A DNA stretch of 64,000 bases from Macrostomum lignano (lineage: Eukaryota): the NCBI GenBank assembly GCA_002269645.1, contig NIVC01003134.1, positions 1-64,000 of the forward strand, given 5' to 3'. Position 1 is the first letter of the stretch. Every line of letters starts with the position of its first letter. The notes below the pieces were generated by a model. It had not been told where the DNA came from, did no database searches, and was given only the letters and a program-made list of their open reading frames with translations. A program made the position numbers and the translations under genes. This document shows, one piece after another, positions 1 through 42,552 of the stretch.

Positions 1-1893
1 TACATTCAGCGGACCGGATCTGCGTACAGCGAGCGGGTGACCGAGCAGCTGTGACGGGTTGCTGGGACGCCAACTGCACAGGGTCCGGTCAGGCCCGGGC
101 AGCCAAACTCGACAGGCTTCAAGCCTATGAGCAGCTGGCTGTGAAAGCTTTCCGAGAGTGCGCCTTGCTAGAAACAACCCTTGAAGACTGGAGCTTCATG
201 GAATGCTGCTGGCCAACGGAGCCGAGATTCTGGACGAAATTGCAGATCGCGCGATTAAAGGATTGAATATGCGGCAACAGCTGAGACTCGAACAGCTGAT
301 GCCGGCACAGTCGGCAAAGAGCTTCATCAGCCCGATGATTGTTATACCAGGCGTTGCGAACGGCTGGCAGACCGGCAATTTTGCTGACGTCTAACGATAA
401 TTTTCATGGTCTCAAAGTTGTCGGGCCGTTGTTAAGAAATCTGCCGTTTCAGGCCTACAGAATGATGCGATTGCTGCAGCTTAGATCACGCGGCGGCAGT
501 CTGTTTGGCCTTATACGACGTGCTCAATCCGACCTGCTTCTGTGGAATGATCCCTGCAACCGAACCGCAGAAAGGGTTGTTGCAGACGAATTACCTGTAC
601 AGACGGTGGGCGACGCTAAGCGGCTGCTTCGGCGAGCCAACTTAACCTTCGGTTCGACGAGTTTCTGCGGCTGAACCTTCAGTTGTCGGACATCCGCCTG
701 CTGATGATTTGACACCGCTATGCTGCCAGATACGAAATCTTTTCTGCGTACCGTTTGCGTTCTAGAAAAATGCGGTAGGCGATTCACAGAGCTGCCTAAA
801 CTGATCATACTCAACCAAATCTGCGTGCTGGGCGCTGCAATCTTTTCAACTCCAAAAAATGCCAAATGTTTGGACGTTCTATTTGGAAAAGTAAGAAGCG
901 AGTCATCGAGTTCGACTGTCAACTTTGAAGGAGCATTTCGCCACTGCTGCACGGTCGCTACGCCAGGATGTTAAAAGAGGAGCGTCTCGCAGTTGAAGCT
1001 GAAATCTTTGATATTTTCCGCCGAATCAAGACGGTCTACGCGTCGGCATTGGAGTCACAGACTTGGATTCCTGAGCCCGACAAGGCCGTGTTGAAGCGAC
1101 GACTGCAGCAAACTAAGTTGAGTTTTTTCACAGAGCAAGTCAGCGAGACTGCTCTGGTGCAGCATTTTGGCGAAGCGTTTGACTCGATGCCACCCAGAGG
1201 ATGCACAATATTAGTTAGCCCGGCTTGCTTTCTAGTCCGAGCTTTGGCTCTTCAACATTACCTGATCTTTCGAACAATGGAGGAAACTTTTGACCAGGAA
1301 TCGCCGCATTATAACGCATATCAGAAGGCGGTGATTCTGACGCCAGCTTTCTTAGAATATCCGCATTATCTGTCAGACCAGCCAGCGGCAGTCAGTGTCG
1401 GTACTCAAGCGCTGGTGCTCGCTCACGAGCTCACGCACGCTGTATTTGGTTCATTCAATCAACATGACGATGGTATGTAAACGCCTCATATTGTGCCCGA
1501 CTCCAGGAGAAGCACGCTTGCCTCAGACAAAGTCTGCTTCTCCGACTGGGCTTCAACAAGACCAACGTTAAGGAGGACTTCGCAGACAGGATCGGTCTGT
1601 CGGTGACTATCGAACTTCTAGCTGAGTCGGGCATCGACCAACAACTTCCAGGATTCATGGAGCGCTACTCACCGCAGCAGCTGCTCTACATTGCCAGCCT
1701 GCGGACTTTTTGCTCGAAGAGTAGCCAAGAGTTCCTACATCACTTCATGGAGACTGGCAGCGAGACGTGGAGCCACACGCCAGGCAGACTGCGCATACGG
1801 AGCCTCATCTCCGGCGATGACGACTTCTTCAGAGCGTTCGGCTGTCCGACTTCCCAGCCCGAGCTCGCCTCCGATGAGTGCCGTCTGTGGTAA
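1..1893 (+). pseudogene. M13 family (neprilysin/ECE-like) zinc metallopeptidase, intronless, broken by several frameshifts (pseudogene or consensus errors); 5' part probably outside the window
   Basis: ORF 968-1480 has LAHELTH (HExxH). The +1 frame is open from 1468: WYVNASYCARLQEKHACL...TNVKEDFAD (ExxxD third zinc ligand)...SHTPGRLRI...FFRAFGCP...CRLW-stop, the typical M13 C-terminus. Upstream pieces lie in other frames (203-394, 720-974). Confidence 0.8.
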
Positions 1894-3291
1894 AAAGAGA
1901 CAGTAAAATGAAAAATAAGCATCCCCTATGTGTTGATGGCCTCCTCAATATCCTGTTGCAAAGAATGAATTTTCAACAGAGTTTGGATATTCAATAGAAC
2001 AATATGAAGAACTTAGGCGTGCCTATTTTTCATTCATTGTTTTGCACTGAATAAAGTTTTTTCTCGTGAAGTACAATCCTGTAATTAGCAAAATCAAAAG
2101 ATGCTACTCAAGCTTATAGATTTCGAAATATGCGGCCGGTTTTTTGCAGAAAAAAGATCGTAATTTTAATTTTTGACGGTAACGGAAGTCCAAACTTTCG
2201 GACTTCCGAATAGTGAATGAACCAAGTAGATTCCAGGGAGAGTCTTCTTCTTGAATTTTGCCAGACAGAAAAGCATGGATAGGCATGCGCAAGATTCTCA
2301 GTATCCTACTTTTCAGATTTTAAATATACTCAGCAAAATTAAAAAGTCACCAGCTTTGAGAGTGCGGAGTAAATTCTAGGCCCAGTATTGACTTTTGAGT
2401 GACGCTATTGCGCCACGCGATGCAGAGTTGGGCTGGTATACTCGACTTATATATTCGACAACTATTTATTGTACTCGTAGAAAGGGACTAAAACGCCAGA
2501 GCAGTACAGAGAGAAGACAAAATAACGCCAGAGCAGCGCAACCCCTATGAAACACACAAATCAACCCAGCAAACAACCCAGACACATTTCACACGCCACC
2601 ACAATTTCGAATAGAGGCAACATGTGGCATGAAAAGCATATCGAATAAGGACTTTCTGTAAAACAGACAGTTAAACTACTTTACTCAGGAATTATTGTAG
2701 AAAGTGCATCGGATTTAGATTATAGGCACGTGATATTACATAGCTTTTCTGTGGAGAATTACTGAATAGTCATTGGTAGAAAACCCAGACAATAGATCCA
2801 AATTTTATTTCCTTCTGAAACTAGTGGATAAAACAAGTGCACTACGAGAATATTACACTTATGCATTACTTTATTTTGCTCACAGAATAAGAAAAAAAGC
2901 TGATTTTTTGGCCGATACAAAGAGTAAGTCAGTTCAGAAATTTATAGTATAATTTTTTAAGCCTCGACAGGAAGCGTCACCATGCAAAAACAGAGATTCC
3001 GTTTTAAATTCAAAAAGCTTCAGTGAATCGCTATCAACTTTTTCAAGCTGAATTTGCTGATGTATTCATGCGATATGGTTTTTCACCGGCAGTGCGGGAC
3101 TGCATTAGGCAGCCTAGCTGCGTATGAAACAATGCATTTTGAGCAGGGCTTGACGCTGCATGGTGGGAGAGTCGGCAGTTAGCTGCCTATATACGTCCGG
3201 TTTGAGCCTCTCAACTCGCATCTCCACCACCGATTTGTGCGGAAAACGTAATAGAGATTATTATTGAATGAGAAAAAATGGCTGGCTTTGT

Positions 3292-3932
3292 TAACAGTTC
3301 CTGCTCGGTCAGTGGAAACTGGGTTTGTCTAACAGTTCTGCTCGGTCAGTGGAAACTGGGTTTATCTAACAGTTCCTGCTCGGTCAGTGGAAACTGGGTT
3401 TGTCTGGCAGTTCCTTCTCGGTCAGTGGAAACTGGGTTTGTCTAGCAGTTCCTGCTCGGTCAGTGGAAACTGGGTTTGTCTAGCAGTTCCTTCTCGATCA
3501 GTGGAAACTGGGTTTGTCTAACAGTTCCTGCTCGATCAGTGGAAACTGGGTTTGTCTAACAGTTCCTGCTCATCAGTGGAAACTGGGTTTGTCTAACAGT
3601 TCCTTCTCGGTCAGTGGAAACTGGGTTTGTCTAACAGTTCCTTCTCGTCAGTGGAAACTGGGTTTGTCTAGCAGTTCCTTCTCGATCAGTGGAAACTGGG
3701 TTTGTCTAGCAGTTCCTTCTCGGTCAGTGGAAACTGGGTTTGTCTAACAGTTCCTGCTCGATCAGTGGAAACTGGGTTTGTCTAGCAGTTCCTTCTCGGT
3801 CAGTGGAAACTGGGTTTGTCTAGCAGTTCCTTCTCGGTCAGTGGAAACTGGGTTTGTCTAGCAGTTCCTTCTCGGTCAGTGGAAACTGGGTTTGTCTAAC
3901 AGTTCCTTCTCGGTCAGTGGAAACTGGGTTTG
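3292..3932. repeat. 38-bp minisatellite, about 17 copies
   Basis: Unit CAGTTCCT(G/T)CTCGGTCAGTGGAAACTGGGTTTGTCTA(A/G), head-to-tail, no spacers. Confidence 0.95.
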
Positions 3933-4706
3933 ATGCTTTAGCATCAAGGGGCGCCAGAGCCATTAAAAACACTTGTTTAAACACTGTTTGCATAGCTGGC
4001 TTCATTAGACAATGCACTGGTTTTAACAAAATTTTTCTACAAGACGTTTTTATTTGAGAACAATTTTGACGAGTTACGAGTGCTTAAAAGAGCTTATCGA
4101 TACATTATGGTCGTTTTTGCCCAAGCAGTCAATCAATATTATCAGCATAGCGCCAAGTGAGGATTGACACAGATAGCCAGACCGCGGCCGTTTCACACTG
4201 GATCAAATGGATTTTGGCCATAGACATTCTCAGCCGACAGGACTGTCGAGCGTTTATTTAAACCTCGCTTCAATACGCCTTAGGCCTGCTAGATGCAATA
4301 TGGCTAGAAATACTAGAAACGCGTTTCCAGATAGATGGTTACTTTGCCTAGAAAATGCAGTGTTAATATAATAGATTCTTAGAAAAATTATTACAATATA
4401 AATCATACATTTTTGACATGTTAAAAAAAGAACATTAAATTTGTAAGTAAATTGTTTTCAAACTCAAGTAGATTGATATGAAATAGTTCGCTTTGCGATT
4501 AGCGAATGTTTAAAATAGAGATCTTATGACGCGTTTTGATTTATAGCACATTAAAGTTGCCTAGCAGCAATCGTCACACTGCACTTCCAGTCAGCGAGCC
4601 CAGATTCTCCTTCCATTGCCAAAACTGCTGCTGTTGTTGAAGATGCAATTGCTGCTGCTGCTGCTGCTGGAGATGCTGCTGGATGAGGCTGATCGAACGC
4701 CGATGC

Positions 4707-5133
4707 TCAAGACTGTTGAACCATCGCTGACGATCTAGAAAGATAATTTTTGTGTAGTCGTTTATAAAATCAAAATTCTACAGATAAATGTTTATTATTC
4801 TACTATTTAAACTAGTAGTAAGACGGCATGTGTATTTTATTTTTAAAAGAAACTGCTGAAGGAAACGTAATTATTATTTTCAGTAGCGTCAATAACTAAA
4901 AGAATCAGTAATTAGGGCTATCGTTAAAATATCAACCATGCTCCTGACACTTACGCAACACGCATACCTACCTGTTGCTCTTATCAACTAAAGCAGAAGA
5001 CGAGCAAGTTTTGTTGCTGGACAATTTTCACTGAAGAATTCATTTCGAGATAGAAAGTTCCCAGTTCCCAGCTCATTCGTTCTTTGTTCCTTTCTATTAA
5101 GAGGCTTTTTCCAGATGAATTTTCTCGTGACCC
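4707..5133 (-). CDS. Candidate terminal exons of the Notch-like gene (5133-4972 and 4734-4707)
   Basis: Acceptor CTAG|GGG at 5134, then an open frame (R)VTRKFIWKKPLNRKEQ...VDKSN, donor AG|GTAGGT at 4971 and acceptor TTCTAG| at 4735. Phases are compatible with the upstream candidate exon. No recognisable domain. Confidence 0.35.
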
Positions 5134-5504
5134 CTAGCTTAGTAAAACAAAACTGTTCAATAATTGGTGATTAAAAAGTCAAAGGGTGAGCGTGTGTACA
5201 CGCTGTACACCCTGTGTGATCGTGTGTACGAGTGCAAGCCTGCGTACAGTATGGGAGCGCTATGTATGTACTCAGGGGTCACCGGAATGGGCATAATTGC
5301 CGTCAGTACTGATTGTGGGAAGATGTAGTGCTAACAACCCGGTTGCAAATATTATTGATATATATTATTTGGAAGGCTAGGAGGTGCTAAAATCCAGCGC
5401 TAAAAAGCTGAAAACATCATATATGTCTTGCCAATGCATTTTGCAGCAAAATTTACACGATGGTCGAGCGTCATTGTACAAGCGTACAAGTGTCACAAGC
5501 GTAC

Positions 5505-5925
5505 TTCTCTTTCTTGGCTTCCACCAACAGTCGTCGCGGCTCCGCTCTGCTGCCAGCCCGCTGGGGGACGGTTCTGACGGTCCTGCAGTTGCCGGTCCCG
5601 AAGCTGCTGAACACGTAGCAGCAGTAGCAGCAGTTGTTGTTGTTGCTGCAGACATTGGCAACTCAGAGAAGTCCGAGTCAGTTGCCGGATGCAGACTCAA
5701 GCTGCCTGGCGACGAGGCCGTCTGGACAAATTTGATGGTTTTTGTAGAAAGAAGAAAACTGTTTGATGCTTGGCGATGCTTGGAGCTGATCGAAATCAGC
5801 GATTAGATGAGTTGGCGAGATAATGGGACAGGCGTTAAAAGTGATGGGCATCCTGGCATCTAATGCGGCTGCTGTCATCGGTGCTGCCAAATCTGCTTTT
5901 GGGCCTGTCAGACTCAATCTTGTGT
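5505..5925 (-). CDS. Candidate intracellular exon of the Notch-like gene (low complexity, probably frameshifted)
   Basis: Acceptor TGTAG| at 5926 joins the phase-1 end of the TM exon (G|AC = Asp) into ORF 5678-5917. ORF 5377-5700 continues in another frame to ...DDCWWKPRKR, with a possible donor A|GTACGC at 5504. Confidence 0.4.
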
Positions 5926-6178
5926 CTACACTAGACTGCTTGCTATCTTGTGCATGTTTTGCTTCTTTTATTAATAGTTGCTAACTAGATTAGCGTGAGC
6001 AATGGATACTCTGCAGAGCGTCTCTTTGCACCGAGTCTTGTTGGGTACGAGCTAGTAAAAGGCTAGGCTGGTTAGTGCGAAAGCAGAGGAAAGCAAAAAT
6101 TCTCATTTTTTCCCATTACGAGTAGTTCGAAGGCTTTTAGACTGATCTAATGATTTCGGATAGGATAGTTGGATAGTT

Positions 6179-6302
6179 GGATAGGGTCTGATGGTGTTGG
6201 ATAGGGTCTGATGGTGTTGGATAGGGTCTGATGGTGTTGGATAGGGTCTGATGGTGTTGGATAGGGTCTGATGGTGTTGGATAGGGTCTGATGGTGTTGG
6301 AT
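6179..6302. repeat. 20-bp minisatellite, 6 copies (intronic)
   Basis: Unit GGATAGGGTCTGATGGTGTT. Confidence 0.95.
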
Positions 6303-6497
6303 CGAACCTTAACTAGGCAGATGAAACCTTCTGTCGGTAGTCGCTCGTATGAGTCAGCGTTGGTTATAAGTATAGTTAATTGTAGGAAAAGTAATATGAG
6401 TTAGTTATATATAATAATATTTAATATACTATACATAAATCCATATACTAATAGCTAATCATAATGCATTTCAGAATCAAAATCGGTAGTCACTCAC

Positions 6498-8260
6498 CTG
6501 ACCCAAAGCGAGTCTCTGAGCTCGGTAGGCCATCGTAGGAACTGGAAGCTGCGCCGGTGACTGATAATGATGCGGCTGCAGCCGGTGCAGCGGCAGCGGA
6601 GAGCCGCTCAGGCTGGCAGCTGGCGGTGGAGCCATCGAGGCTGAATCCACCGTGCCAGTCGCCCGCCACAGGCGAGGCGGTCAGGCTTAGCGGCCCGTGA
6701 CTCGCGCCTGCCGACGACACCCACGGAATCTTCCTGCTTCATTGTTGCCGTCCGTCTCGGCCACGACGCCGCCTCGGCGCATGGCGCTGAGAAGGAAACC
6801 GAGCAGCAGGCCCAGCACCAGCAGGCAGGCGGCTGCCACTGCGCTGGCAGCAGGAAGCTGCCGACTCCGCCAGAGCGACTCACTCCGATCACGCCGCCGC
6901 CCCGCCGCCGCCGCCCCCGCCGCCGCTCCTGTTGCGGCCGCCACCGCTACCCGCCGCAGACAACTGGCTGTCACCGCTGCCAACCGAAGTAACCCGACGC
7001 AGCCGCAGGGGCAGCAGCAGGCGGCTGGACATGACCCCGGCCGCCACCGCCTGGGCTGCGAAGTTTGCGCTTCGATAGCAGAAATCGGTCAGCGACGCGT
7101 CTTGATTGGCGTCAGCGGCTGACGAGCTGGAAAAAATCTTGGCGTCCAAGCAAGCGTCCAGCTGGAATCTGACCAGCGATGCGTCAGCCGAGCCGGGACG
7201 GTGGCGGCCACCGGAGGCTGGACAAGTCGCAGAAGCGTGCCCAGGTTGCGGGACAGACTTCGCGTCAGCGAACGGATGGCCTCGGACGCTTCGGCTGGAG
7301 ACGCCGCCACCTCCAGTTCCAGCAGCTCGCTAGCAGCAGTTTTGTCGAGTTGGGATTCGCGCCACATCGAAGCAGTCGCGTCGGCGGATGTCTTTGAAGA
7401 CGACTGCGGCGCTGCTGCTGCCGCCGGCGACTGGGACGGCGGAGCGGCCGCCGGCTCAGCGCAGTCACCGCCGTCCAACAGACAGGCGGGACTGTCGCAG
7501 CCTCGGTCGCAGCTGCCGTCGGCGAAGTGATCGGCGCAGTAGCGATAGGGACACGGGTCCGAGTCGGGCTTCGCTCTCGCCGACAGCCGATCGTCTCGAC
7601 AGTCGCCGCCGTCGAACAGGCAGGCCTCGGTGTTGCAGACTGTGTTGCACTCGCCGTCTGCGTACACCGAGTCGCAGGCGGCCAAGCCGAGCCTCATAGC
7701 GGTGCAGTTCACCCACGGCCGAGCGCCCAGGCCGCCGCAGTCGCCCCGTCCCAGTCGCAGGCCGGCCCGCTGCAGCGCCTGTCACAGCGACCGTCGCCTG
7801 CGAGGACGTCGCAGCCGGCCTCGCGACAGCGGTTGCGCGCCTCCGCGAACGTCGGGCACCGTTCCGCGCAGGTGGGGCCGCACAGACCCGGCTGGCAGTG
7901 GCAACGAAAGCCGCCGCCAAGGCGAACCTGCCGGCAGGTTGAGGCGGCGCCGCGGCACGGCGATTCGTCGCAGGCGGAGCCGATGAACTGGCAGTGCTGA
8001 CCGGCGCGACCGGGCGGGCAGAGGCAGGCGGGACCAGCCGAGCTGTCGAAGACGCAGCGACCGCCGCCGAGACACACGACGCTGTCGCACGGGTCTACGC
8101 GTCGATGGCAGAGCGGACCGGAGAAGCCCGGCTTGCAGGTGCAGGTGAAGCTGCTCAGACGGTCGGACGGACCTCTGCGGAGGCAGCGAAGGGTGCCCGC
8201 TGGGCTGCACGGACCGAGGCTGTTCGCGCATTCACCCGTGTCACCTTGACAGTACGGGCC
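6498..8260 (-). CDS. Notch-like receptor exon: 3 EGF, 3 LNR, NOD, NODP, TM and start of the cytoplasmic tail; about 5 single-base frameshifts
   Basis: Acceptor TTGCAG|GGCCCG (GPYCQ) is in frame with the upstream GFQ. LNRs: ...GDGRCDRRCSGPACDWD[G]GDC, ADGECNTVCNTEACLFDGGDC, FADGSCDRGCDSPACLLDGGDC. NOD: IRSLTRSLSRNLGTLLRL. NODP: FCYRSANFAAQAVAA. TM: AVAAACLLVLGLLLGFLL, then MRR. Donor CAG|GTGAGT at 6497. Confidence 0.9.
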
Positions 8261-8445
8261 CTGCAAGGAAAGGTCGTTTATGATATTCAATACTAGAAAA
8301 CAAAGATACGAGCTACTTCGAAAAATTGTGACAGAAATTTTGTTCAGACATTTGTGGTTTCGGTGTATCTCAAAACTTTCAGTACGCCCCTCGTAGTTTT
8401 TAGGTGTTGAATTTAGGAGTTTTGATCATGTTTAGGTAAGCTGAA

Positions 8446-9016
8446 GTGGGTAACCGTAGATGGGGTGGGTGGCGGAGGATGGGGTGGGTAGCGGAGGATG
8501 GGGTGGGTAGCGGAGGATGGGGTGGGTAGCGGAGGATGGGGTGGGTAGTGGAGGATGGGGTGGGTAGCGGGGGATGGAGTGGGTAGCGGAGAATGAGGTA
8601 GGTAGCGGAGGATGGGGTGAGTAGCGGGGGATGGGGTGGGTAGCGGAGGATGGGGTGGGTAACGGAGGATGGGGTGGGTAGCGGAGGATGGGGTGGGTAA
8701 CGGAGGATGGGGTGGGTAGCGGGGATGGAGCGGGTAGCGGAGAATGAGGTGGGTAGCGGAGGATGGGGTGAGTAGCGGAGGATGGGTGGGTAACGGAGGA
8801 TGGGGTGGGTAGCGGAGGATGGGGTGGGTAGCGGAGGATGGGTGGGTAGCGGAGGATGGGGTGGGTAGCGGAGGATGGGGTGGATAGCGGAGGATGGGGT
8901 GGGTAATGGAGGATGTGGTGGGTAGGGAGGATGGGGTGGGTAATGGAGGATGTGGTGGGTAGGGAGGATGGGGTGGGTAGCGGAGGATGGGGTGGGTAGC
9001 GGAGGATGGGGTGGGT
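8446..9016. repeat. 19-bp G-rich minisatellite (intronic), copy 1
   Basis: Unit GGGGTGGGTAGCGGAGGAT. Confidence 0.95.
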
Positions 9017-9554: not shown

Positions 9555-10760
9555 GTGAGAAGTGAAGACTGCAAATTAAAGGTGTGACAGTTGACTAGGT
9601 AGCAGTGAAGAGTGACGGGTGAGGAGTGAAGAGTGACGGGTGAGAAGTGAAGAGTGACGGGTGAGGAGTGAAGAGTGACGGATGAGGAGTGAAGAGTGAC
9701 GGGTGAGGAGTGAAGAGTGACGGGTGAGGATTGAAGACTGCAAAGTAAATGTGTGACAAGTGACGGGTGAGGAGTGAAGAGTTTGACGGGTGAGGAGTGA
9801 AGAGTTTGACGGGTGAGGAGTGAAGAGTGACGGGTGAGGAGTGAAGAGTGACGGGTGAGGAGTGAAGAGTGACGGGTGAGGAGTGAAGAGTGACGGGTGA
9901 GGAGTGAAGAGTGACGGGTGAGGAGTGAAGAGTGACGGGTGAAGAGTGAAGAGTGACGGGTGAAGAGTGAAGAGTGACGGATGAGGAGTGAAGAGTGACG
10001 GGTGAGGATTGAAGACTGCAAAGTAAATGTGTGACAAGTGACGGGTGAGGAGTGAAGAGTTTGACGGGTGAGGAGTGAAGAGTTTGACGGGTGAGGAGTG
10101 AAGAGTTTGACGGGTGAGGAGTGAAGAGTGACGGGTGAGGAGTGAAGAGTGACGGGTGAGGATTGAAGACTGCAAAGTAAATGTGTGACAAGTGACGGGT
10201 GAGGAGTGAAGAGTTTGACGGGTGAGGAGTGAAGAGTTTGACGGGTGAGGAGTGAAGAGTTTGACGGGTGAGGAGTGAAGAGTGACGGGTGAGGAGTGAA
10301 GAGTGACGGGTGAGGAGTGAAGAGTGACGGGTGAGGAGTGAAGAGTGACGGGTGAGGAGTGAAGAGTGACGGGTGAAGAGTGAAGAGTGACGGGTGAAGA
10401 GTGAAGAGTGACGGATGAGGAGTGAAGAGTGACGGGTGAGGATTGAAGACTGCAAAGTAAATGTGTGACAAGTGACGGGTGAGGAGTGAAGAGTTTGACG
10501 GGTGAGGAGTGAAGAGTTTGACGGGTGAGGAGTGAAGAGTTTGACGGGTGAGGAGTGAAGAGTGACGGGTGAGGAGTGAAGAGTGACGGGTGAGGAGTGA
10601 AGAGTGACGGATGAGGAGTGAAGAGTGACGGATGAGGAGTGAAGACTTTGACGGGTGAGGAGTGAAGAGTGACGGGTGAGGAGTGAAGAGTGACGGGTGA
10701 GGAGTGAAGAGTGACGGGTGAGGAGTGAAGAGTAACGGGTGAGAAGTGAAGAGTTACGAG
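9555..10760. repeat. 21-bp minisatellite with periodic higher-order inserts (intronic)
   Basis: Unit GTGAAGAGT(TT)GACGGGTGAGGA, interrupted four times by TTGAAGACTGCAAAGTAAATGTGTGACAA; a degenerate copy of the insert lies at about 9560-9590. Confidence 0.95.
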
Positions 10761-11217
10761 TGCAGTGTGAAGAGTGTAAGAGGTAGAGTGAACTTGAAAA
10801 ATGTGAATAGCAGCGGTGAATAATAAAATTTGATCAGTAGTAAAACAGTGAAAATAGTAAAGTACACTTGATAGAGCCGAAAGTCAGGCAGACTCTGGCA
10901 AAAAGATCACGCAATAATGCTACAAAAACCTCCTGCTCATTATCCATGGACTTCGTGCTGTTTTTCCGTAGCAGAACATTTTTTGTTTGAATTAGCATCA
11001 ACTCAACTTCAGGGATGGGAAAGTTATTAAATCATTTTATAGAAAGAAAAGATATGGGCCTGTGCCCGTGCGTCTTTACTGTGCTTGCTCTGGCTCTCAG
11101 ATCCTTGGGGAAGCGTATTTCCCGAAAACGGATGGACTTTATAAATGGAGCCGTTACCTAATAAGAATTAAGTGACTAATAGTGCATTGCAATGTCAGGT
11201 ACGTTTGTAGTATTTGG

Positions 11218-11745
11218 TAGGACGGGGTGGGTAACGGAGGATGGGGTGGGTAGCGGAGAATGGGGTGGGTAGCGGAGGATGGGGTGGGTAGCGGAGAATG
11301 TGGTGGGTAGCGGAGGATGGGGTGGGTAGCGGAGAATGTGGTGGGTAGCGGAGAATGGGGTGGGTAGCGGAGGATGGGGTGGGTAGCGGAGAATGGGGTG
11401 GGTAGCGGAGGATGGGGTGGGTAGCGGAGAATGGGGTGGGTAGCGGAGGATGGGGTGGGTAGCGGAGAATGGGGTGGGTAGCGGAGGACGGAGTGGGTAG
11501 CGGAGGATGGGGTGGGTAGCGGAGGATGGGGTGGGTAGCGGAGGATGGGGTGGGTAGCGGAGGATAGGGTGAATAGCGAAGGATGGGGTGGATAGCGGAG
11601 GATGGGGTGGGTAGCGGAGGATAAGGTGGGTAGCGGAGGATGGGGTGGGTAGCGAAGGATGCGGTGGCTGGCGGGGGATGTGGGGTGGGTAGCGGAGGAT
11701 GGGGTGGGTAGCGGAGGATGGGGTGGGTAGCAGAGGATGGGATGG
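11218..11745. repeat. 19-bp G-rich minisatellite (intronic), copy 2
   Basis: Same unit as 8446-9016, with GGAGAAT variants. Confidence 0.95.
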
Positions 11746-12006
11746 GGCTGATAGTGAAAAATGACCATTTTGTAAGAAAGAGGGGCAAGAGGACTCTTGG
11801 GCTATTAGAAGATCAATCCTAAGGAGGATTTTTCAGGCTCTACCAGTTAAACAGATTAATTAGCTAAATAAAAATGGTGTGTATAAAATATACATGGAGG
11901 ACGTGTAGTATCTGAAAATAAATTTTAATTGTTGCAGATCTTTCCTGAAATTCAAGTCTCCATGTGCTGTAATGCACCTGTCTCCAATCCTCACTCAGCC
12001 ACTCAC

Positions 12007-12545
12007 CTGAAAGCCGGGTTTGCAGGTGCACCTGAACCCTCCAGGCTCGTCAACGCACTCGCCCCCATTCAGACAGGCCCCGCCGAACTGCTCGCATTCG
12101 TTCACGTCGATCTGGCAGCGACTGCCGGTGAAACCGCGTCGACACTGGCACACCGGAAGTTCGACGCCAACCAACTGGAAACAGCGGCCGCCGTTCAGAC
12201 ACCAGGACTGCCACCGGCTGGAATTGCAGGGTTCCGGCTGGACTGTCGGCAAGCCGGTCGGCTGCGATAAATGCTCGCAGTATCGGCCTCGAAATCCCGC
12301 ATGACAACGGCAGTTGAATCCGCCAGCTGCTGTCGGCAAGCAGCGGCCTCGGCCAAGACACGATGATTCGGTGCACGGGTTCAGCAGCTGCTCGCAGCGA
12401 AGGCCCAACCAGCCGGACGCGCAGTCGCATACGAATGTGCCGGTGGCGGCGAAGCTTCTGCACAGGCCACCGTGAAGGCACGGCTGGTTCGAGGCGCAGG
12501 GATCTGACACCGATTCTGACTGCGGTGGGACTTCGCAGCGGGTGC
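12007..12545 (-). CDS. Notch-like receptor exon, 4 EGF repeats (one Ca-binding)
   Basis: Acceptor CTGCAG|GC (phase 1, G-TRCEV) and donor CAG|GTGAGT at 12006. Repeats: DPCASNQPC..., NPCTESSC..., EPCNSSRWQSWC..., DVNECEQFGGACLNGGECVDEPGGFRC. Confidence 0.95.
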
Positions 12546-12589: not shown

Positions 12590-13070
12590 CGGTGGGTGGT
12601 GGGTGAGGGTCGGCTGTGGGGTGGCGGGTGAGGGGGTCGGCTGTGGGGTTGTGGGTGAGGGGGTTGGCTGTGGGGTGGTGGGTGAGGGTGTTGGCTGTGG
12701 GGTGGTGGGTGATGGGGTTGGCTGTAGGTGGTGGGTGACGGGGTTGGCTGTAGGTGGTGGGTGACGGGGTCGGCTGTGGGGTGGCGGGTGAGGGGGTCAG
12801 CTGTGGGGTTGTGGGTGAGGCGGTTGGCTGTGGGGTGGTGGGTGAGGGTGTTGGCTGTGGGGTGGTGGGTGATGGGGTTGGCTGTAGGTGGTGGGTGACG
12901 GGGTTGGCTGTAGGTGGTGGGTGACGGGGTTGGCTGTGGGGTGGTGGCTGAGGGGTTGGCTGTGGGGTGGTGGGTGGAGGGGGTCGGCTGTGGGGTGATG
13001 GGTGAAGGGGTTGGCTGTGGGTTGGTGGGTGTGGAGGTTGGCTGTGGGGTGGTGGTGAGGGGGTTGGCTG
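12590..13070. repeat. 27-bp G-rich minisatellite next to the exon acceptor
   Basis: Unit GGGTGAGGGGGTTGGCTGTGGGGTGGT. Confidence 0.9.
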
Positions 13071-13864
13071 TAAATTAGTTAATTTCACTAACGTCCCCTA
13101 GAGTGCTTGAGGGAGTCCTCAGTCCTCTAACAGCTGTGACTTAAAATGTTTTTTTGCTTTCTCTAGTCAGCTTGTAGCAGTTCTTTTTTCAATTTCAGCA
13201 CGTTCTAGAAGAGAGTGTTTCGCTGTCTGGGCACTGAATTGCCATTAAATTTGAGGTCCACATCGGCAACTGCATATTAAAGATTTCCCAAAGGAATTGG
13301 TATTTGCAGTTGAAGGCTTGGCTCGAAAGCTTTGCAAAGTGACAGAGCTTGAGTAGGATCGAGTTTCAAATCCTCTCTTTTTCGCTGAGATGGGGAGCAT
13401 TCAGTTCTTCCCAAAATAGTACCCTAGTTATAGTTTTTTCCCCATTCCTGCTTAACTCTAATGGGGAACTGTTCAGCAGAAAAACAGTTTCTTTTTCATA
13501 TTGTTGTCACTTTTTTGCATGCTGTTTCTATTAATTCCAGCCATCAGCCCCATTAGCAGCAACGCTTTTTTCTTCCTGTTCTTAGGGGATAAAAATCTGT
13601 TGGGATCAGAGAGGATTCCGGGTTAGGGGTCTGGGCTGAAATGGCTTGATTTTGATATTTTTTTGTCGGATCAATTCTTGCATGTTTTCCCGAACAAGGC
13701 CAACATCAGCTTGCAGCTTCCTCAGTTCGGCCCCTGGCCTTCTGCCCTTCCCCTCCGGATGCGCTGGTCCCCGCTCTGTCAATTATCCCCTCCGAGGCGA
13801 GGGGAAACCGGATAAATGGTTGCCAGATTGGAGCTCGGGTCACTGCAAAGTGCTGGCTGTCTCT

Positions 13865-14390
13865 GTGTCTGACTCTCTGACACCCTGACTCTCTGACACT
13901 CTGACTCTCTGACACCCTGACTCTCTGACACCCTGACTCTGACACCCTGACTCTCTGACACCCTGACTCTCTGACACCCTGACTCTCTGACACCTTGACT
14001 CTCTGACACCCTGACTCTCTGACACTCTGACTCTCTGACACCCTGACTCTCTGTCACCCTGACTCTCTGACACCCTGACTCTCTGACACCCTGACTCTCT
14101 GACACCCTGACTCTCTGACACCCTGACTCTCTGACACCCTGACTCTCTGACACTCTGACTCTCTGACACCTTGACTCACTGACACCTTGACTCACTGACA
14201 CCCTGACTCTCTGACACCCTGACTCTCTGACACCCTGACTCTCTGACACCCTGACTCTCTGACACCCTGACTCTCTGACACCCTGACTCTTTGACACCTT
14301 GACTCTCTGACACCCTGACTCTCTGACACTCTGACTCTCTGACACCCTGACTCTCTGACACCCTGACTCTCTGCCACCACTCTCTGACTT
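13865..14390. repeat. 16-bp minisatellite (intronic)
   Basis: Unit CTGACTCTCTGACACC. Confidence 0.95.
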
Positions 14391-15239
14391 TCCCAGAGCC
14401 TCTAAATCTTCTGACTGTAAATCTCTGAGACTCTCTGACTTTCTCAAACTCTGACATTTTGACACCCTAGCTGTGTGAGCATGTGTATGAGTGCGGGCCT
14501 GCGTGCAGTATTGGCGCCTTTGTACGAGTTTGCTTAATCTTGCAGCCTGAGGAGAGTTGGAGGCGGGGGTCCAGGTCTTCTGCAGGGGAAATAAGCCAGC
14601 TTGTTTCGGAAGTCCCTGAGCCAACCCGAATGTCCGGGAGACTATTTTCTTCAAATTAAAATAATTACTTCATGAAAAACGTAGACACGCGCCGTTAGAC
14701 TAAGGATTTCAGATTTTGCCTCAAAGTTTTAGCCACTCGGACCAAATATTTGAGCTTCGAATAGGACTCGAAAGAGACTGCATGTCAGGATGTATATTGT
14801 GTGTCATATTTCTGTGGCATCATTTTTAACAGAAATCGTGACTGGAGAGACACAAATTTGCAGAACTGCCTGCCGCCTTCAACCCTCAGTTGCCACTTAA
14901 TTATTTAACACCACATATCGAGGAGAAAGGCACATCAGCCTAGTTATCGAGCTAAAAGGCACACAGAGAGAGAGAGAGAGAGAGTGGGCACAGACTGGGA
15001 CAGAGAGGCAAAGAGCGGATCGATGAAGAGCTCGAGAGCGCAGCAGATTGGGTTGTCAATCTTGGCATCAGCTGCGATTGTTGGTTAAAAGGCAGACAGG
15101 CGGACAGTGATTCTTGAATTTGTCACTAGTAAAATTTCGATTCGGCTTAAATATAATGGGGGTGTTTTGTGCGTTCGAAATTTCAGTAATGCGATGCTAA
15201 GTTTTAAGTTCGTGAAGCTTCGAGCTTATGAAATTTTCA

Positions 15240-16296
15240 GTTTGTGAAGTTTAGAGTTTGTGAAGTTTAGAGTGTGTGTAGCTTCGAGTTTGTGAAGTTT
15301 AGAGTGTGTGAAGTTTAGAGTTTGTGAAGTTTAGAGTGTGTGTAGCTTCGAGTTTGTGAAGTTTAGAGTTTGTGAAGTTTAGAGTTTGTGAAGTTTAGAG
15401 TTTGTGAAGTTTAGAGTTTGTGAAGCTTCGAGTTTGTGAAGTTTAGAGTTTGTGAAGTTTAGAGTGTGTGAAGTTTAGAGTTTGTGAAGTTTAGAGTTTG
15501 TGAAGTTTAGAGTGTGTGAAGTTTAGAGTGTGTGAAGTTTAGAGTTTGTGAAGTTTAGAGTGTGTGTAGCTTCGAGTTTGTGAAGTTTAGAGTTTGTGAA
15601 GTTTAGAGTTTGTGAAGTTTAGAGTTTGTGAAGTTTAGAGTTTGTGAAGTTTAGAGTTTGTGAAGTTTAGAGTGTGTGTAGCTTCGAGTTTGTGAAGTTT
15701 AGAGTTTGTGAAGTTTAGAGTTTGTGAAGTTTAGAGTTTGTGAAGTTTAGAGTTTGTGAAGTTTAGAGTTTGTGAAGTTTAGAGTTTGTGAAGTTTAGAG
15801 TTTGTGAAGTTTAGAGTTTGTGAAGTTTAGAGTGTGTGAAGTTTAGAGTGTGTGAAGTTTAGAGTTTGTGAAGTTTAGAGTTTGTGAAGTTTAGAGTTTG
15901 TGAAGTTTAGAGTTTGTGAAGTTTAGAGTTTGTGAAGCTTCGAGTGTGTGAAGTTTAGAGTTTGTGAAGTTTAGAGTTTGTGAAGTTTAGAGTTTGTGAA
16001 GTTTAGAGTGTGTGAAGTTTAGAGTTTGTGAAGTTTAGAGTTTGTGAAGTTTAGAGTTTGTGAAGTTTAGAGTTTGTGAAGTTTAGAGTTTGTGAAGCTT
16101 CGAGTTTGTGAAGCTTCGAGTTTGTGAAGCTTCGAGTTTGTGAAGCTTCGAGTTTGTGAAGCTTCGAGTTTGTGAAGCTTCGAGTTGAGAAGTTTAGAGT
16201 TTGTGAAGTTTAGAGTTTGTGAAGTTTCGAGTTTGTGAAGCTTCGAGTTTGTGAAGTTTCGAGTTTGTGAAGCTTAGAGTTTGTGAAGTTTAGAGT
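15240..16296. repeat. 16-bp minisatellite (intronic)
   Basis: Unit GTTTAGAGTTTGTGAA, variants GCTTCGAG and GTGTGTA. Confidence 0.95.
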
Positions 16297-16750: not shown

Positions 16751-17211
16751 CTGAAAATCCGTCAACGCAGCGACATTTGCCGTCGAAATCGCCGCTGCAG
16801 ACGCCACCGTTGTAGCAGCCGCCGTTCAGCCGACAGTCGATCGCTGTTGAAGGTCGAGACGGTGACAAAGGCAGCTCGCAGTGCCGACCCTCGAAGCCGG
16901 CCGGGCACTGACAGCTGTACCCGCCCTCAGTGTTGACGCAACTGCCTCCGTTGGCGCACGGAGCCGACAGGCACTCGTTGACGTCAATGCTGCACGTGTC
17001 GCCTACAAAACCAGACGGACAGAGGCACTGGAAGCCCCAGCTGGTGGAGTTCACCACGCATGCGCTGGCCGGATGGCACGGGCTGTGCTGGCACGGATCG
17101 GGCAGCTCGCAGCGGTCGCCGACGAAGCCCTGCGGACAGGCGCACGTCAGCGAGCCGGCGGTGCAGACACCGCCGTGTTGGCAGGGCTCGTGGCGGCAGT
17201 CCGATGAAGCC
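16751..17211 (-). CDS. Notch-like receptor exon, 4 EGF repeats (one Ca-binding); exact acceptor uncertain (17222, 17216 or 17212)
   Basis: DCRHEPCQHGGVC..., DPCQHSPC..., DVNECLSAPCANGGSCVNTEGGYSCQC, DCRLNGGC...CVDGFS. Donor CAG|GTGAAA at 16750, phase 1, matches the next exon. Confidence 0.92.
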
Positions 17212-17237
17212 CTGACTGCGGCTGCGGGGGGGGGGTG

Positions 17238-17669
17238 AGGGGACATTGTCTGAAGTCTGAGGGACATTATCTGAGGGACATTGTCTGAGGGACATTGTCT
17301 GAGGGACATTGTCTGAGGGAAATTTTCTGATGGACATTGTCTGAGGGACATTGTCTGAGGGATATTGTCTGAGGGACATTGTCTGAGGGACATTTTCTGA
17401 TGGACATTGTCTGAGGGACATTGTCTGAGGGACATTTTCTGAGGGACATTGTCTGAGTGACATTGTCTGAGGGACATTGTCTGAGGGACATTTTCTGATG
17501 GACATTGTCTGAGGGACATTGTCTGAGGGATATTGTCTGAGGGACATTGTCTGAGGGACATTTTCTGAGGGACATTGTCTGAGTGACATTGTCTGAGGGA
17601 CATTGTCTGAGGGACTTTGTCTGAGGGACATTGTCTGAGGGACATTGTCTGAGGGACATTGTCTGAGGG
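17238..17669. repeat. 14-bp minisatellite abutting the polypyrimidine tract of the EGF exon
   Basis: Unit GAGGGACATTGTCT. Confidence 0.95.
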
Positions 17670-18375
17670 AAGGAAGTCTGTCACACTGTTTGTCATATTG
17701 CTTGTCATATTGTCTGTCATACTGTCTGTCAACCTATCTGTTTGTTCAGTGTCTCATTGAGTCATTTGAGAGTTTTATCAATTGGCTCGCACGCTACGAG
17801 AGTGTTTAGTATTTTTGTCTGCATGACATTGTATAAACCCATCAAACCAACATCTTCGACGCACTTCATCATGGCGTCATCAAAATCGATCAGCTGTTCA
17901 ATAAAACATTTTTTACAATGCTGCAAGCAAGCAAAGAGAAAAAGGATTAACCCTGACCGTAAAATTCCTTTGGGATTTGGTAGTTCATGGAATAGAGAGG
18001 CATAACAGCGTTTCTATTGGCAAGTCCGCCTACCGAACTCATCACTGAACTGCTGGTCAGGAATTCTGTCTGTAATTTTTAATTACAGGTCGAACACCTA
18101 CTTAGAACTGTTACTAAACAGAGGCGTAGGATGGGGACAGAGATGCGAGGGGAAAGATAGTCAAAGAAGGACTCAAACAGGCCGATTCATTGGCATGCTG
18201 GATCTGCATCGTAGCATTCGGTCCCCAGAGAGTGGCCATGTGCTGTGCGAAAGTCGCATGACTAGATGACTAGATTAGCATCAGGCACACACCTTTCCCT
18301 GTGAACTCTCCTCATCTGATAGCATGTATAAGCATTTCTGCGAATTTTATTCTGCTTGCGGAACATTGTGTTTAT

Positions 18376-24274: not shown

Positions 24275-24676
24275 TGCTCACATGAAGGTGTATCTCTATG
24301 TGTTTGTTGACGCCATAGCAACAACTAGATTGGTTGAACTGCAATTTTGTTCACGTGCAATTACACACAGAGAAAGAGAGAATCTCTGTACGAATATTTA
24401 ATACAGCTGGAGCCAGATGCTTGGACTGTGGCGTCGATATGCGACTGCTGATGCTGCGCTGGCTTCTCGTCGATTCGCTGACGCCAGGGGGGCCAATAAC
24501 GGCCGCCGGCCATAGGCAAGAGCTGAGGCAAGGGCAGGTGGCCGAGGATTGTTTGCCTTAATCCGATAATAGGATAGAAATGCAGAAGTGCTCTGCATGC
24601 TTTATTAAATTGAGTTTTATGAATGCATTTCTAACTCCAGAAAGTGTTTTATGCTCAAACAAAAGTTTTATTCATA

Positions 24677-28227
<3,551 letters not shown>

Positions 28228-36662: not shown

Positions 36663-37109
36663 TTAAATCTTTGGAGACTGAGGCTTAACAGTTTCGCTTG
36701 TAGCACCGGTGTCGCTTCCTTCGACAGCGCCGCTGCCGCCGCCACCGCCGCCACCGCTGCCTCCAAGCAGCGTTTTCAACCACGAAGCGTCGCGACCTTC
36801 CTGTTGCTGCTGCTGCTGCTGTTGCTGCTGTTTCAGCAGCTTCTGCTGGTATTGCTGCTTAGCGTTAACTTTAAACGGTTTTTTACCTGACACGACTCGC
36901 AAAATATCGTCGTAATCCAGAGACTCGAACTCCAGCAGAGCGTTGGTCAGCTGCTCCAGCTCCTGGCGGTGGTCGCGAACGAGACGCCGGACCCGCTCTC
37001 GACTGTCCTCGAGGATGCGCTTGACTTCGCTGTCCGCTTGGGCGAGAGTCTGCTGACTAGAATTTTCTGCCGATACTGTCATAACGCCGATGCCGTCGCT
37101 CATGCCGTA
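36663..37109 (-). CDS. YME1L1: YME1L exon 6 (end of peptidase M41 domain, polyQ/polyG tail, stop)
   Basis: Acceptor CCCCAG|TAC, phase 0; YGMSD...EVKRILEDSRERVRRL...ALLEFESLDYDDILRVVSGK. Confidence 0.93.
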   Translation of the reverse strand, partial: YGMSDGIGVMTVSAENSSQQTLAQADSEVKRILEDSRERVRRLVRDHRQELEQLTNALLEFESLDYDDILRVVSGKKPFKVNAKQQYQQKLLKQQQQQQQQQQEGRDASWLKTLLGGSGGGGGGGSGAVEGSDTGATSETVKPQSPKI

Positions 37110-37179
37110 CTGGGGAATGAGGCGGAGCAGAGTGAGGGGGGTTGACTGGCATAAATGAACGATGAACAAGACAAATGGG

Positions 37180-37656
37180 ACAGACAGACAGGTACTGGTG
37201 GACAGACAGACAGGGTATAGAGAGACAGAAAGACAGGTATAGAGAGACAGATAGACAGGTAAAGATAGACAGATAGGCAGGTAAAGATAGACAGATAGGC
37301 AGGTAAAGATAGACAGATAGACAGGTAAAGATAGACAGATAGACAGGTAAAGATAGACAGATAGGCAGGTAAAGATAGACAGATAGACAGGTATAGATAG
37401 ACAGATAGGCAGGTAAAGATAGACAGATAGACAGGTATAGATAGACAGATAGACAGGTAAAGATAGACAGATAGACAGGTAAAGATAGACAGATAGACAG
37501 GTATAGATAGACAGATAGGCAGGTAAAGATAGACAGATAGACAGGTATAGATAGACAGATAGGCAGGTAAAGATAGACAGATAGACAGGTATAGATAGAC
37601 AGATAGGCAGGTAAAGATAGACAGATAGACAGGAATAGAGAGACAGATAGACAGGT
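37180..37656. repeat. 22-bp minisatellite in YME1L intron 5 (continues at 39567-39780 after an insertion)
   Basis: Unit AGACAGATAG(A/G)CAGGTA(A/T)AGAT. Confidence 0.93.
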
Positions 37657-39566: not shown

Positions 39567-39852
39567 GTATAGATAGACAGATAGACACGTATAGAGAGAC
39601 GGATAGACAGGTAAAGATAGACAGATAGGCAGGTAAAGATAGACAGAAAGACAGGTATAGAGAGACACATGGACACGTACAGATGGACAGATAGACAGGT
39701 ATAAATGGACAGACAGGTATAGATAGACAGGCAGACAGACATGAAGACAGGCAAAAATAGACAGACACAGAGAGGCGCACAGAAAACGGCAAATCTCTAA
39801 CTCTCGTACAAAATGCGCTCGAACCCCCCGCCCTCACAAAACACTTTCTCAC

Positions 39853-40197: not shown

Positions 40198-40244
40198 CTG
40201 GGGGGGGGGGGGGTAAAGAGGGAGGTTAAATCTCAGTTTTATGA

Positions 40245-41492: not shown

Positions 41493-41614
41493 TACGTACT
41501 TCCTTAGAAAAAAATCTCAAAAGCTACTTGCTTAATAAGTAGCATAAACCATTGCCCGACAAGTTTAGCTATATACATAATTTGCTCATAAATGTAGACG
41601 AAAATTAAACGCAC

Positions 41615-41833: not shown

Positions 41834-41939
41834 CTGCGGACGATGGGTACAGCGTAAATTGTTATTAATATATAATTAGTTTTCTTATAGAACCCAATCT
41901 TAATTAATATATAAGCATCTACAGAAAGTTAAGATAATG

Positions 41940-42541: not shown

Positions 42542-42552
42542 CCGCGCCCTTA

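What the first reader, a model, noticed from the sequence alone, without database searches (positions are those of the whole stretch)
4570..6800. Notch-like receptor with no ankyrin repeats in its cytoplasmic tail
Seen: EGF-LNRx3-NOD-NODP-TM-MRR is followed only by Ser/Ala/Gly-rich sequence and small candidate exons. No ankyrin-like ORF or canonical juxtamembrane WFP RAM motif appears before the convergent M13 gene; only a distal WWKP next to a basic KPRKR cluster. Knowledge: canonical Notch needs RAM+ANK to assemble the CSL/Mastermind complex. Inference: a decoy/ligand sink, or a non-canonical receptor with an intact mechanosensor but a novel output domain.
Basis: partly seen in the sequence, partly recalled or inferred. 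Interest (0 to 1): 0.78.

Follow-up and report, generated by a model that had tools for sequence, protein, structure and literature searches.

The report
Flatworm Notch-like gene without ankyrin repeats
A Macrostomum lignano (flatworm) gene encodes the outer, force-sensing and membrane parts of a Notch receptor but no recognisable inner signalling part; the sequence has several probable assembly errors, so only a cDNA can show whether this is a real truncated receptor.

Summary
The window is Macrostomum lignano DNA. On the minus strand lies a short Notch-family gene (exons 17221-16751, 12545-12007, 8266-6498). It encodes 11 EGF repeats and three LNR modules (Pfam E=1.5e-22). Pfam barely detects the HD domain, but AlphaFold plus Foldseek place it on human NOTCH1-3 NRR crystal structures. 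A TM helix and an MRR stop-transfer follow.

No ankyrin repeat is encoded anywhere in the 64 kb on either strand, and no WxP (RAM) motif follows the TM. By contrast, 38 of 41 canonical homologues have WxP, and every homologue with a TM and at least 400 residues after its LNRs has ANK.

However, the last exon is broken by three to five 1-nt frame shifts, all in G/C runs. Two UniProt models of the same gene read through different subsets of them, and the neighbouring M13 gene also has one. These are most likely long-read assembly indels rather than decay. The tail's frame, its length (31 aa or about 100+ aa) and its 3' exons cannot be fixed without cDNA.

Best reading: a real, lineage-specific Notch paralogue without RAM or ANK, acting as a ligand-binding receptor that cannot signal through CSL. 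Rivals: exons missing beyond M13, or a dying duplicate. Moderately interesting and unproven.

The parts
16751..17221 (-). Exon A: EGF1-3 and the start of EGF4. EGF3 (16973-16878) is a Ca-binding EGF carrying CLSAPCANGGSC, which fits the O-glucose and O-fucose consensus. Acceptor ccccgcag|CC, donor CAG|GTGAAA. An upstream signal-peptide exon was not found.
12007..12545 (-). Exon B: end of EGF4, EGF5-7, start of EGF8 (Ca-binding, DVNEC). 100% identical to residues 1-179 of UniProt A0A1I8FNQ7.
6498..8266 (-). Exon C, 68-72% GC: end of EGF8, EGF9-11, LNR-A/B/C, HD, linker, TM and the start of the cytoplasmic tail. Broken by 3-5 single-base frame shifts in the window.
7461..7828 (-). Three LNR modules (7828-7734, 7709-7599, 7553-7461) with all cysteines present. 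LNR-A is split by the frame shift at 7745 (GGGG where GGGGG is needed for WDGGDC).
6976..7328 (-). Heterodimerisation (NOD/NODP-like) domain: beta-alpha-beta-beta...alpha-beta, with two invariant HD-C cysteines. Frame shift at about 7195 (CCCGG run). No RxxR S1 site between the two halves.
6843..6975 (-). Gly/Ser/Ala-rich linker between HD and TM. It contains a GGC repeat with one or two frame shifts (about 6901 and 6842).
6780..6842 (-). Transmembrane helix AVAAACLLVLGLLLGFLLSAM, followed by MRR.
6498..6782 (-). Cytoplasmic tail within exon C. In frame 0 it reads MRRGGVVAETDGNNEAGRFRGCRRQARVTGR and then TGA at 6689-6687 as the window stands. With a 1-nt repair at about 6694 it continues as a Ser/Ala/Gly-rich stretch to 6498. 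No WxP, no domain, weak coding signal.
6492..6497 (-). Splice donor GTGAGT after ...GGGTCAG. GC content drops sharply beyond it.
5380..5721 (-). Candidate exon after acceptor tgtccag|ACGG. Its ORF TASSPGSLS...DDCWWKPRKR...STS* is phase-compatible with frame 0 of exon C. The UniProt model A0A1I8IH08 instead uses 5661-5474 in another frame (VANVCSNNNN...TLVQ*). No domain; unverified.
4574..4734 (-). Candidate last exon after acceptor ctttctag|AT: RQRWFNSLEHRRSISLIQQHLQQQQQQQLHLQQQQQFWQWKENLGSLTGSAV*. It is phase-compatible with frame 2 of exon C, or with a donor at 5505. AATAAA at 4258-4253. Unverified.
1..1893 (+). 3' part of a convergent M13 (neprilysin/ECE-like) peptidase gene, with HELTH, EDFAD and C-terminal CRLW*. 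It limits the space for further Notch exons to about 4.6 kb and itself carries a frame break near 1466-1470.

Best explanation
This is a real, Macrostomum-lineage Notch paralogue. It keeps the ligand-binding type of ectodomain (11 EGF repeats), the autoinhibited LNR-HD switch and the membrane anchor, but it has a short or low-complexity cytoplasmic tail in place of RAM and ANK. The frame breaks in the window are homopolymer-length errors of a long-read assembly, not mutations.

Without RAM and ANK it cannot build the CSL/Mastermind complex. Its most likely action is therefore to bind DSL ligands, in trans or in cis, without producing a canonical signal, and so to damp signalling through the animal's canonical Notch receptors, as engineered Notch lacking the intracellular domain does.

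Shown here: the domain anatomy, the absence of ANK and WxP in the window, the predicted NRR fold, and the indel contexts.

Inferred: that the transcript ends in the window, that the protein is made, that it binds ligand, and that it acts as a sink.
For: - Species and gene: 82-94% identity to two M. lignano UniProt models.
- Ectodomain under constraint: all cysteines of 11 EGF and 3 LNR modules are intact, with strong codon-usage signal from 8260 to 6940.
- NRR: aligns with 28 canonical NRRs and both HD-C cysteines are invariant. AlphaFold gives pLDDT 80.7 and pTM 0.76. Foldseek hits are human NOTCH1/2/3 NRRs at E about 1e-14 with TM-score (target) 0.72-0.78.
- No ANK in 64 kb.
- No WxP after the TM, against 38 of 41 canonical homologues with WxP 30-45 residues after the TM start. 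Every homologue with a TM and at least 400 residues after its LNRs has ANK.
- Not a recent copy of a canonical Notch: outside the LNRs nothing among 1.84 billion representative proteins matches, and the nearest M. lignano paralogue fragment is about 50% identical.
- Frame breaks look like errors. Each lies in a G/C run. The UniProt models change frame relative to the window without losing residues, and they read intact through 7745 (one model), 7195 and 6842 (both models). The neighbouring M13 gene also needs a 1-nt repair.
- Phase-compatible candidate 3' exons with stop codons and an AATAAA lie before the M13 gene.
Against: - No transcript evidence of any kind. The protein database returned only genome-derived UniProt models, and the loci could not be fetched.
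- The tail has only a weak coding signal. As written, the window reads a stop 31 residues after the TM.
- Three DNA versions disagree about the frame after 6696.
- The AlphaFold alignment was made of canonical NRRs, which biases the model towards that fold.
- The window ends inside the M13 gene, so exons further downstream on the minus strand cannot be excluded.
- Ligand binding and a sink function are argued by analogy only.
Confidence: 0.45

Rival explanations
1. Incomplete gene model. The receptor is canonical, or at least has ANK, but the exons for the rest of the intracellular domain lie outside what was examined. They could be beyond the left edge of the window, with the M13 gene nested in a long intron, or lost or misplaced by misassembly of this repeat-rich polyploid genome.
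For: - The window starts inside the M13 gene, so nothing beyond it can be read.
- Exon C ends at a strong donor, so at least one more exon is expected.
- Every homologue with a TM and at least 400 residues after its LNRs has ANK.
- The published M. lignano assembly named in PMC10468722 (Mlig_3_7) is fragmented (>5000 contigs, N50 about 245 kb) and the genome is a recent polyploid. Which assembly the window comes from is not known.
- Surveys of Notch genes warn that missing terminal domains are often prediction or assembly artefacts (PMC2770060).
Against: - The WxP RAM motif should lie within about 20 residues of the TM, in the exon that is present, and it is absent.
- The gene's known introns are 3.7-4.2 kb; this one would have to exceed 6.5 kb plus the whole M13 gene.
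- Candidate terminal exons with stop codons and a poly(A) signal exist before M13.
- The UniProt model A0A1I8IH08 also terminates there.
Confidence: 0.2
2. Decaying or dead duplicate. After the recent whole-genome duplication, or after a partial duplication that left the intracellular exons behind, this copy lost its function. The frame shifts are real and the 'tail' is former non-coding DNA.
For: - At least three frame shifts in one exon, and a stop 31 residues after the TM as the window reads.
- The UniProt model A0A1I8FNQ7 shares the shift at 7745.
- The coding signal fades after the TM.
- M. lignano has many redundant gene copies.
- No transcript-derived protein was found.
Against: - All frame breaks are in G/C runs in a 68-72% GC exon, and they differ between three DNA versions of the gene.
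- There are no in-frame stops or lost cysteines in about 900 codons of ectodomain.
- The gene is about 50% diverged from its nearest paralogue yet keeps every structural residue, which requires long purifying selection.
- A frame break also sits in the neighbouring M13 gene. That fits a property of the assembly better than two dead genes side by side.
Confidence: 0.2
3. Non-canonical signalling receptor. Ligand pull opens the NRR, ADAM and gamma-secretase cut, and a new intracellular fragment is released that acts without CSL. That fragment would be Ser/Ala-rich with a basic WWKPRKR(N)RQRW cluster and a poly-Gln end.
For: - Predicted intact NRR and TM.
- A phase-compatible exon chain 6498 to 5721-5505 to 4734-4574 would place a basic cluster next to a Gln-rich C-terminus. 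Gln-rich stretches occur in the C-terminal activation region of some Notch proteins (own knowledge).
Against: - The exon chain is one of three phase-compatible possibilities, and each junction matches by chance about one time in three.
- No domain, weak coding potential and no conservation outside the species.
- Cleavage sites cannot be read from the sequence.
Confidence: 0.1

Closest known systems
Canonical Notch receptors (Drosophila Notch, C. elegans LIN-12/GLP-1, vertebrate NOTCH1-4; among flatworms e.g. Calicophoron daubneyi Notch A0AAV2T2Y2)
   Same: EGF repeats that include a Ca-binding EGF with O-glucose and O-fucose consensus, three LNR modules, an HD domain with two conserved cysteines, a single TM and a basic stop-transfer. 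The EGF number (11) resembles LIN-12/GLP-1 (10-13). The LNRs score best against these proteins.
   Different: No WxP RAM motif, no ankyrin repeats and no recognisable C-terminal domain in the window. The HD is too diverged for Pfam NOD/NODP cut-offs. The HD-TM linker is longer and Gly-rich. The flatworm canonical Notch found here has both WFP and ANK.
Engineered Notch lacking the intracellular domain (dominant-negative 'extracellular plus TM' constructs used in Drosophila and Xenopus; own knowledge)
   Same: Same parts list: ligand-binding ectodomain, NRR and TM, with no RAM or ANK. This is the basis for the 'ligand sink' mechanism.
   Different: Those are laboratory constructs. Here it would be a natural, diverged gene, and its ligand binding is untested.
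Human NOTCH2NL
   Same: A natural Notch-derived paralogue without the signalling domain that modulates Notch signalling (own knowledge).
   Different: NOTCH2NL is a recent partial duplication that keeps only the first six EGF repeats and has no LNR, HD or TM. The flatworm gene keeps the NRR and TM and is an old, diverged paralogue.
synNotch-type engineered receptors (Notch NRR-TM core with a foreign intracellular domain; cf. PMC11839477)
   Same: A Notch regulatory core joined to a non-Notch cytoplasmic part. This is a model for how a non-ANK tail could still be released by regulated proteolysis.
   Different: Artificial. In the flatworm gene no functional output module is recognisable.

Membership tests
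Notch receptor family | Tandem EGF-like repeats, including Ca-binding EGFs, in the ectodomain | tested here: met
   11 six-cysteine EGFs. Pfam EGF E=2.4e-17 and 1.1e-23, EGF_CA E about 1e-9.
Notch receptor family | Three LNR (Lin-12/Notch) modules directly after the EGF repeats | tested here: met
   PF00066 E=1.5e-22 with 3 stretches. All cysteines align with 28 canonical Notch NRRs. This requires a 1-nt repair at 7745.
Notch receptor family | Heterodimerisation domain (NOD/NODP) packing against the LNRs to form the NRR | tested here: inconclusive
   Pfam NODP 18.2 bits, below the 25-bit cut-off, and NOD not found. HMMER finds no relatives for this part. However, the alignment keeps both HD-C cysteines, and the AlphaFold model matches NOTCH1/2/3 NRR structures at E about 1e-14 with TM-score (target) 0.72-0.78. 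The model's alignment consisted of canonical NRRs, which biases it.
Notch receptor family | Single-pass TM followed by basic residues | tested here: met
   AVAAACLLVLGLLLGFLLSAM then MRR, at 6842-6774. The same reading appears in both UniProt models.
Notch receptor family | RAM region with a WxP motif within about 10-25 residues after the TM | tested here: not met
   Absent in frames 0 and 2, the supported ones. 38 of 41 canonical homologues have it 30-45 residues after the TM start.
Notch receptor family | Seven ankyrin repeats in the intracellular domain | tested here: not met
   Nothing on either strand of the 64-kb window. In homologues ANK starts about 100-310 residues after the TM start, in most about 130-170. 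Exons outside the window cannot be excluded.
Notch receptor family | Regulated S2/S3 proteolysis and CSL-dependent transcription | not testable with these tools
   Requires biochemistry. No RxxR S1 site is visible between the HD halves.
Processed or unprocessed pseudogene | Frame shifts or stops that are real in the genome, with relaxed constraint on structural residues | tested here: inconclusive
   Frame shifts are present but lie in G/C runs and vary between DNA versions. Structural cysteines are all kept. Read-level data are not available.

The most novel reading that the evidence does not exclude
A natural 'synNotch'. On this reading a flatworm has kept the force-gated Notch proteolytic switch but replaced RAM and ANK with a new tail (a basic cluster plus a poly-Gln end). 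That tail would be released on ligand pull and would act in the nucleus independently of CSL, giving a second, orthogonal juxtacrine channel built on Notch hardware.
Probability: 0.08. Interest if true: 0.8.

Novelty: new variant of a known kind. Interest (0 to 1): 0.45.

Why it matters
Comparative surveys describe the Notch intracellular domain (WxP plus ANK) as the most conserved part of the receptor across animals (PMC12166595; bioRxiv 10.1101/2025.09.30.679519). A natural, membrane-anchored paralogue that keeps the ligand-binding and force-sensing parts but has dropped that domain would be an endogenous modulator of Notch signalling of a kind known mainly from laboratory constructs. It would also sit in a regeneration and stem-cell model animal where RNAi is routine.

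It is equally a cautionary case. In an error-prone polyploid assembly, a 'missing domain' cannot be separated from a broken gene model without cDNA.

Tried and rejected
- Protein database searches for transcript-derived copies or orthologues found only two genome-derived M. lignano models and one paralogue fragment. even missed the two near-identical models, so absence in this index is weak evidence.
- The full HMMER search found relatives only for the LNR part. No orthologue with the same HD or tail was found, so conservation of the ANK-less architecture could not be tested.
- Fetching the source loci of the UniProt models, or of a window ORF, to read beyond the window was tried. None is on record.
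- Pfam on the candidate tail exons and on all minus frames downstream of 6558 gave nothing.
- Codon-usage scoring to fix the tail's frame gave only weak scores: frame 2 +4.4 for 6696-6600, otherwise about 0. The plus-strand ORF 5384-5806 scores as well as the minus-strand candidates, so the frame stays unresolved.
- An intron model for M13 (1472-1527) was rejected in favour of a 1-nt indel, because the repaired protein aligns without a break to ECE-1.
- Rfam and tRNA scans of the window found nothing.
- The literature gave no description of M. lignano Notch genes or of ANK-less Notch paralogues in flatworms. One review reports up to six Notch genes in planarians (PMC10970066) but gives no domain detail.
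Full report
**What the window is.** The composition and ORF pattern are those of an animal genome: GC-rich exons separated by AT-rich introns full of minisatellites. A repaired translation of the region matches two Macrostomum lignano UniProt entries. These are A0A1I8IH08 (P0001) and A0A1I8FNQ7 'Notch receptor 3' (P0002), at 82-94% identity, with exon B 100% identical over 179 residues. The window is therefore M. lignano, a free-living flatworm with a recent whole-genome duplication; the published assembly Mlig_3_7 is fragmented (PMC10468722).

**The gene.** It lies on the minus strand. Three exons with good splice sites are visible:
- exon A, 17221-16751;
- exon B, 12545-12007;
- exon C, 8266-6498.

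Together they encode 11 six-cysteine EGF repeats. EGF3 and EGF8 are of the calcium-binding type. EGF3 carries CLSAPCANGGSC, which fits the O-glucose and O-fucose consensus sites of ligand-binding Notch EGFs; the sequence is read directly and the consensus is from my own knowledge.

Three LNR modules follow (Pfam PF00066, E=1.5e-22, three stretches). Next comes a region that Pfam barely recognises: NODP scores 18.2 bits against a cut-off of 25, and NOD is not found. After it come a Gly-rich linker, a clear TM helix (6842-6780) and MRR. No EGF-coding exon lies further upstream, and the signal-peptide exon was not found. Upstream on the same strand is a YME1L/FtsH-like protease gene (36663-45331). 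Downstream, and convergent, is an M13 peptidase gene ending at 1893.

**Is the regulatory switch intact?**
- MAFFT aligns the repaired LNR-HD region with 28 canonical Notch NRRs. All LNR cysteines and both HD-C cysteines are invariant columns.
- AlphaFold2 with that alignment gives mean pLDDT 80.7 and pTM 0.76, with the beta-alpha-beta-beta...alpha-beta order of a Notch HD.
- Foldseek against the PDB returns only Notch NRR structures at the top: human NOTCH1 3L95/3ETO, NOTCH3 4ZLP, NOTCH2 2OO4 and mouse Notch1 7ABV. E-values are about 1e-14 and TM-scores normalised to the target are 0.72-0.78. The next hits have E>0.1.

The alignment fed to AlphaFold was made of canonical NRRs, so this shows compatibility with the fold rather than independent proof. 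No RxxR furin site lies between the two HD halves.

**No ANK, no RAM.**
- Pfam on the three minus-strand frames from 6558 down to the 38-bp repeat array at about 3850 finds nothing, even at E<=10.
- I recalled the human NOTCH1 ankyrin domain from memory and confirmed it as identical to PDB 2F8X chain K. It finds nothing in the whole window on either strand: tblastn best E=1.9, phmmer best E=8.5.
- As a control, a full HMMER search of 1.84 billion representative proteins gave 313 hits. All of them except the gene's own model match only the LNR part.
- The named hits are canonical Notch receptors of insects, reptiles, mammals, nematodes, a snail, a rotifer and a trematode flatworm.
- Every hit with a TM and at least 400 residues after its LNRs has ANK, starting about 100-310 residues after the start of the TM, in most about 130-170.
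- 38 of 41 such hits have a WxP motif 30-45 residues after the TM start.

In the flatworm gene the 97 codons after the TM are in the same exon as the TM, and they contain no WxP in the frames supported by the data. This is the strongest single argument that the intracellular part is non-canonical, because it does not depend on exons that might be missing.

**The frame problem.** As it stands in the window, exon C cannot be translated in one frame. The frame runs as follows:
- frame 1 down to 7745;
- frame 0 down to about 7195;
- frame 2 down to about 6901;
- probably frame 1 down to 6842;
- frame 0 through the TM down to 6696;
- then either a stop at 6689-6687 or frame 2 down to 6498.

Each switch lies in a G or C run or a GGC repeat, within an exon of 68-72% GC. 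Examples are GGGG where GGGGG would give WDGGDC, and CCCGG.

The two UniProt models are collinear with the window but change frame relative to it without losing residues. Their source DNA must therefore differ from the window by small indels. P0001 reads intact through 7745. Both models read intact through 7195 and 6842. P0001 in turn is garbled in exon B, where the window is intact.

The neighbouring M13 gene shows the same kind of defect. An apparent 56-nt intron is better explained by one missing base near 1468. After repair, the C-terminal domain aligns without a break to ECE-1 residues 476-670 at E=5.7e-9, against 0.037 and 0.0027 for the two pieces.

The ectodomain has lost no cysteine and has no in-frame stop, although it is about 50% diverged from its nearest paralogue fragment, A0A1I8HF91. 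That fragment shares the odd 'CQPGLCGPTC..RCPTF' EGF-LNR junction. I therefore read the frame shifts as long-read homopolymer errors. A real pseudogene remains possible; I put it at about 0.2.

**The tail and the 3' end.** After the TM, all three DNA versions agree on MRRGGVVAETDGNNEAGRFRGCRRQARVT, and then they disagree. Codon-usage scoring is strongly positive over the ectodomain, at +7 to +17 per 90 nt, but close to zero after about 6780, with frame 2 slightly best. The tail is therefore either very short (31 residues, if the window is right) or about 100 residues of Ser/Ala/Gly-rich low-complexity sequence ending at a strong donor (CAG|GTGAGT).

Downstream there are two GC-richer islands with acceptor sites:
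- 5721, with an ORF containing WWKPRKR. The UniProt model P0001 instead uses 5661-5474 in another frame.
- 4734, with a Gln-rich ORF ending at 4574, followed by AATAAA at 4258-4253.

Three exon chains are phase-compatible. None has a Pfam match. A plus-strand ORF over the first island scores equally well. These exons are candidates, not findings.

**Weighing the readings.** The anatomy fits a Notch-family receptor that can bind ligand and has the autoinhibited switch but cannot assemble CSL/Mastermind. By analogy with engineered Notch lacking its intracellular domain (own knowledge), the most probable effect is titration of DSL ligands, that is, negative modulation of canonical signalling. I give 'real ANK-less paralogue' about 0.45. 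Within that, the decoy action is the default, and a released tail with its own activity is a minority possibility (about 0.1 overall).

Against it stand two other readings. One is an incomplete gene model (0.2): the window ends inside M13, and a nested-gene arrangement or a misassembly cannot be excluded. The other is a dying duplicate (0.2). No transcript evidence could be obtained with the tools at hand, and that is the decisive gap.

**Novelty and score.** Surveys of Notch across animals describe the WxP and ANK intracellular domain as the conserved core (PMC12166595; bioRxiv 10.1101/2025.09.30.679519). They also warn that missing terminal domains are often annotation artefacts (PMC2770060). 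I found no description of a natural receptor with an NRR and TM but no ANK.

If confirmed, this is a new variant of a known kind, in a tractable regeneration model. Given the broken frame, the lack of cDNA and the lineage-specific, single-species evidence, I score interest at 0.45.

Noticed in passing
window 1400-1650 (+): The M13 peptidase gene has a frame break near 1466-1470. Adding one base (GAC-CGA) makes the C-terminal domain align without a gap to human ECE-1 476-670, whereas an intron model (1472-1527) would delete about 26 conserved residues. This points to indel errors in the assembly beyond the Notch-like exon.
   Followed up: yes
window 36663-45331 (-): A YME1L/FtsH-like AAA+ / M41 metalloprotease gene lies upstream on the same strand (Pfam AAA E=7e-35, Peptidase_M41 E=4e-35). 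Its exons look frame-intact. Its C-terminus carries poly-Gln and poly-Gly runs.
   Followed up: partly
window 3282-3932, 8459-9016, 9604-10792, 11219-11746, 12594-13072, 13869-14378, 15199-16296, 17255-17670, 24674-28037 and others: The introns and flanks of the Notch-like gene are packed with minisatellites of 4-38 bp units, including 3.3 kb of (ATAG)n. The 19-bp unit GATGGGGTGGGTAGCGGAG occurs in two separate introns (8459-9016 and 11219-11746).
   Followed up: no
P0003 (UniProt A0A1I8HF91, M. lignano), compared with window 7900-7470: A 193-aa paralogue fragment shares the unusual last-EGF/LNR junction (CQPGLCGPTC..RCPTF.E.R) at about 50% identity. This suggests a small lineage-specific Notch-like subfamily. 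Its C-terminal architecture is unknown.
   Followed up: partly
window 46700-54900 (+): An AT-rich stretch with several 100-220 aa ORFs (46840-47502, 52905-53489, 53718-54119, 54503-54856) that have no Pfam match at E<=0.001. It may be a degraded mobile element or lineage-specific genes.
   Followed up: partly
window 56581-59392: A 2.8-kb array of a 24-bp unit (AGTGCAATAATCCTTGGTTTATCA, about 117 copies) gives long open frames on both strands. These ORFs are repeat artefacts.
   Followed up: no
tool behaviour: The word-indexed protein search returned the two near-identical M. lignano models for one query but not for a shorter query from the same protein. 'No hit' in that index is therefore weak evidence of absence.
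   Followed up: no
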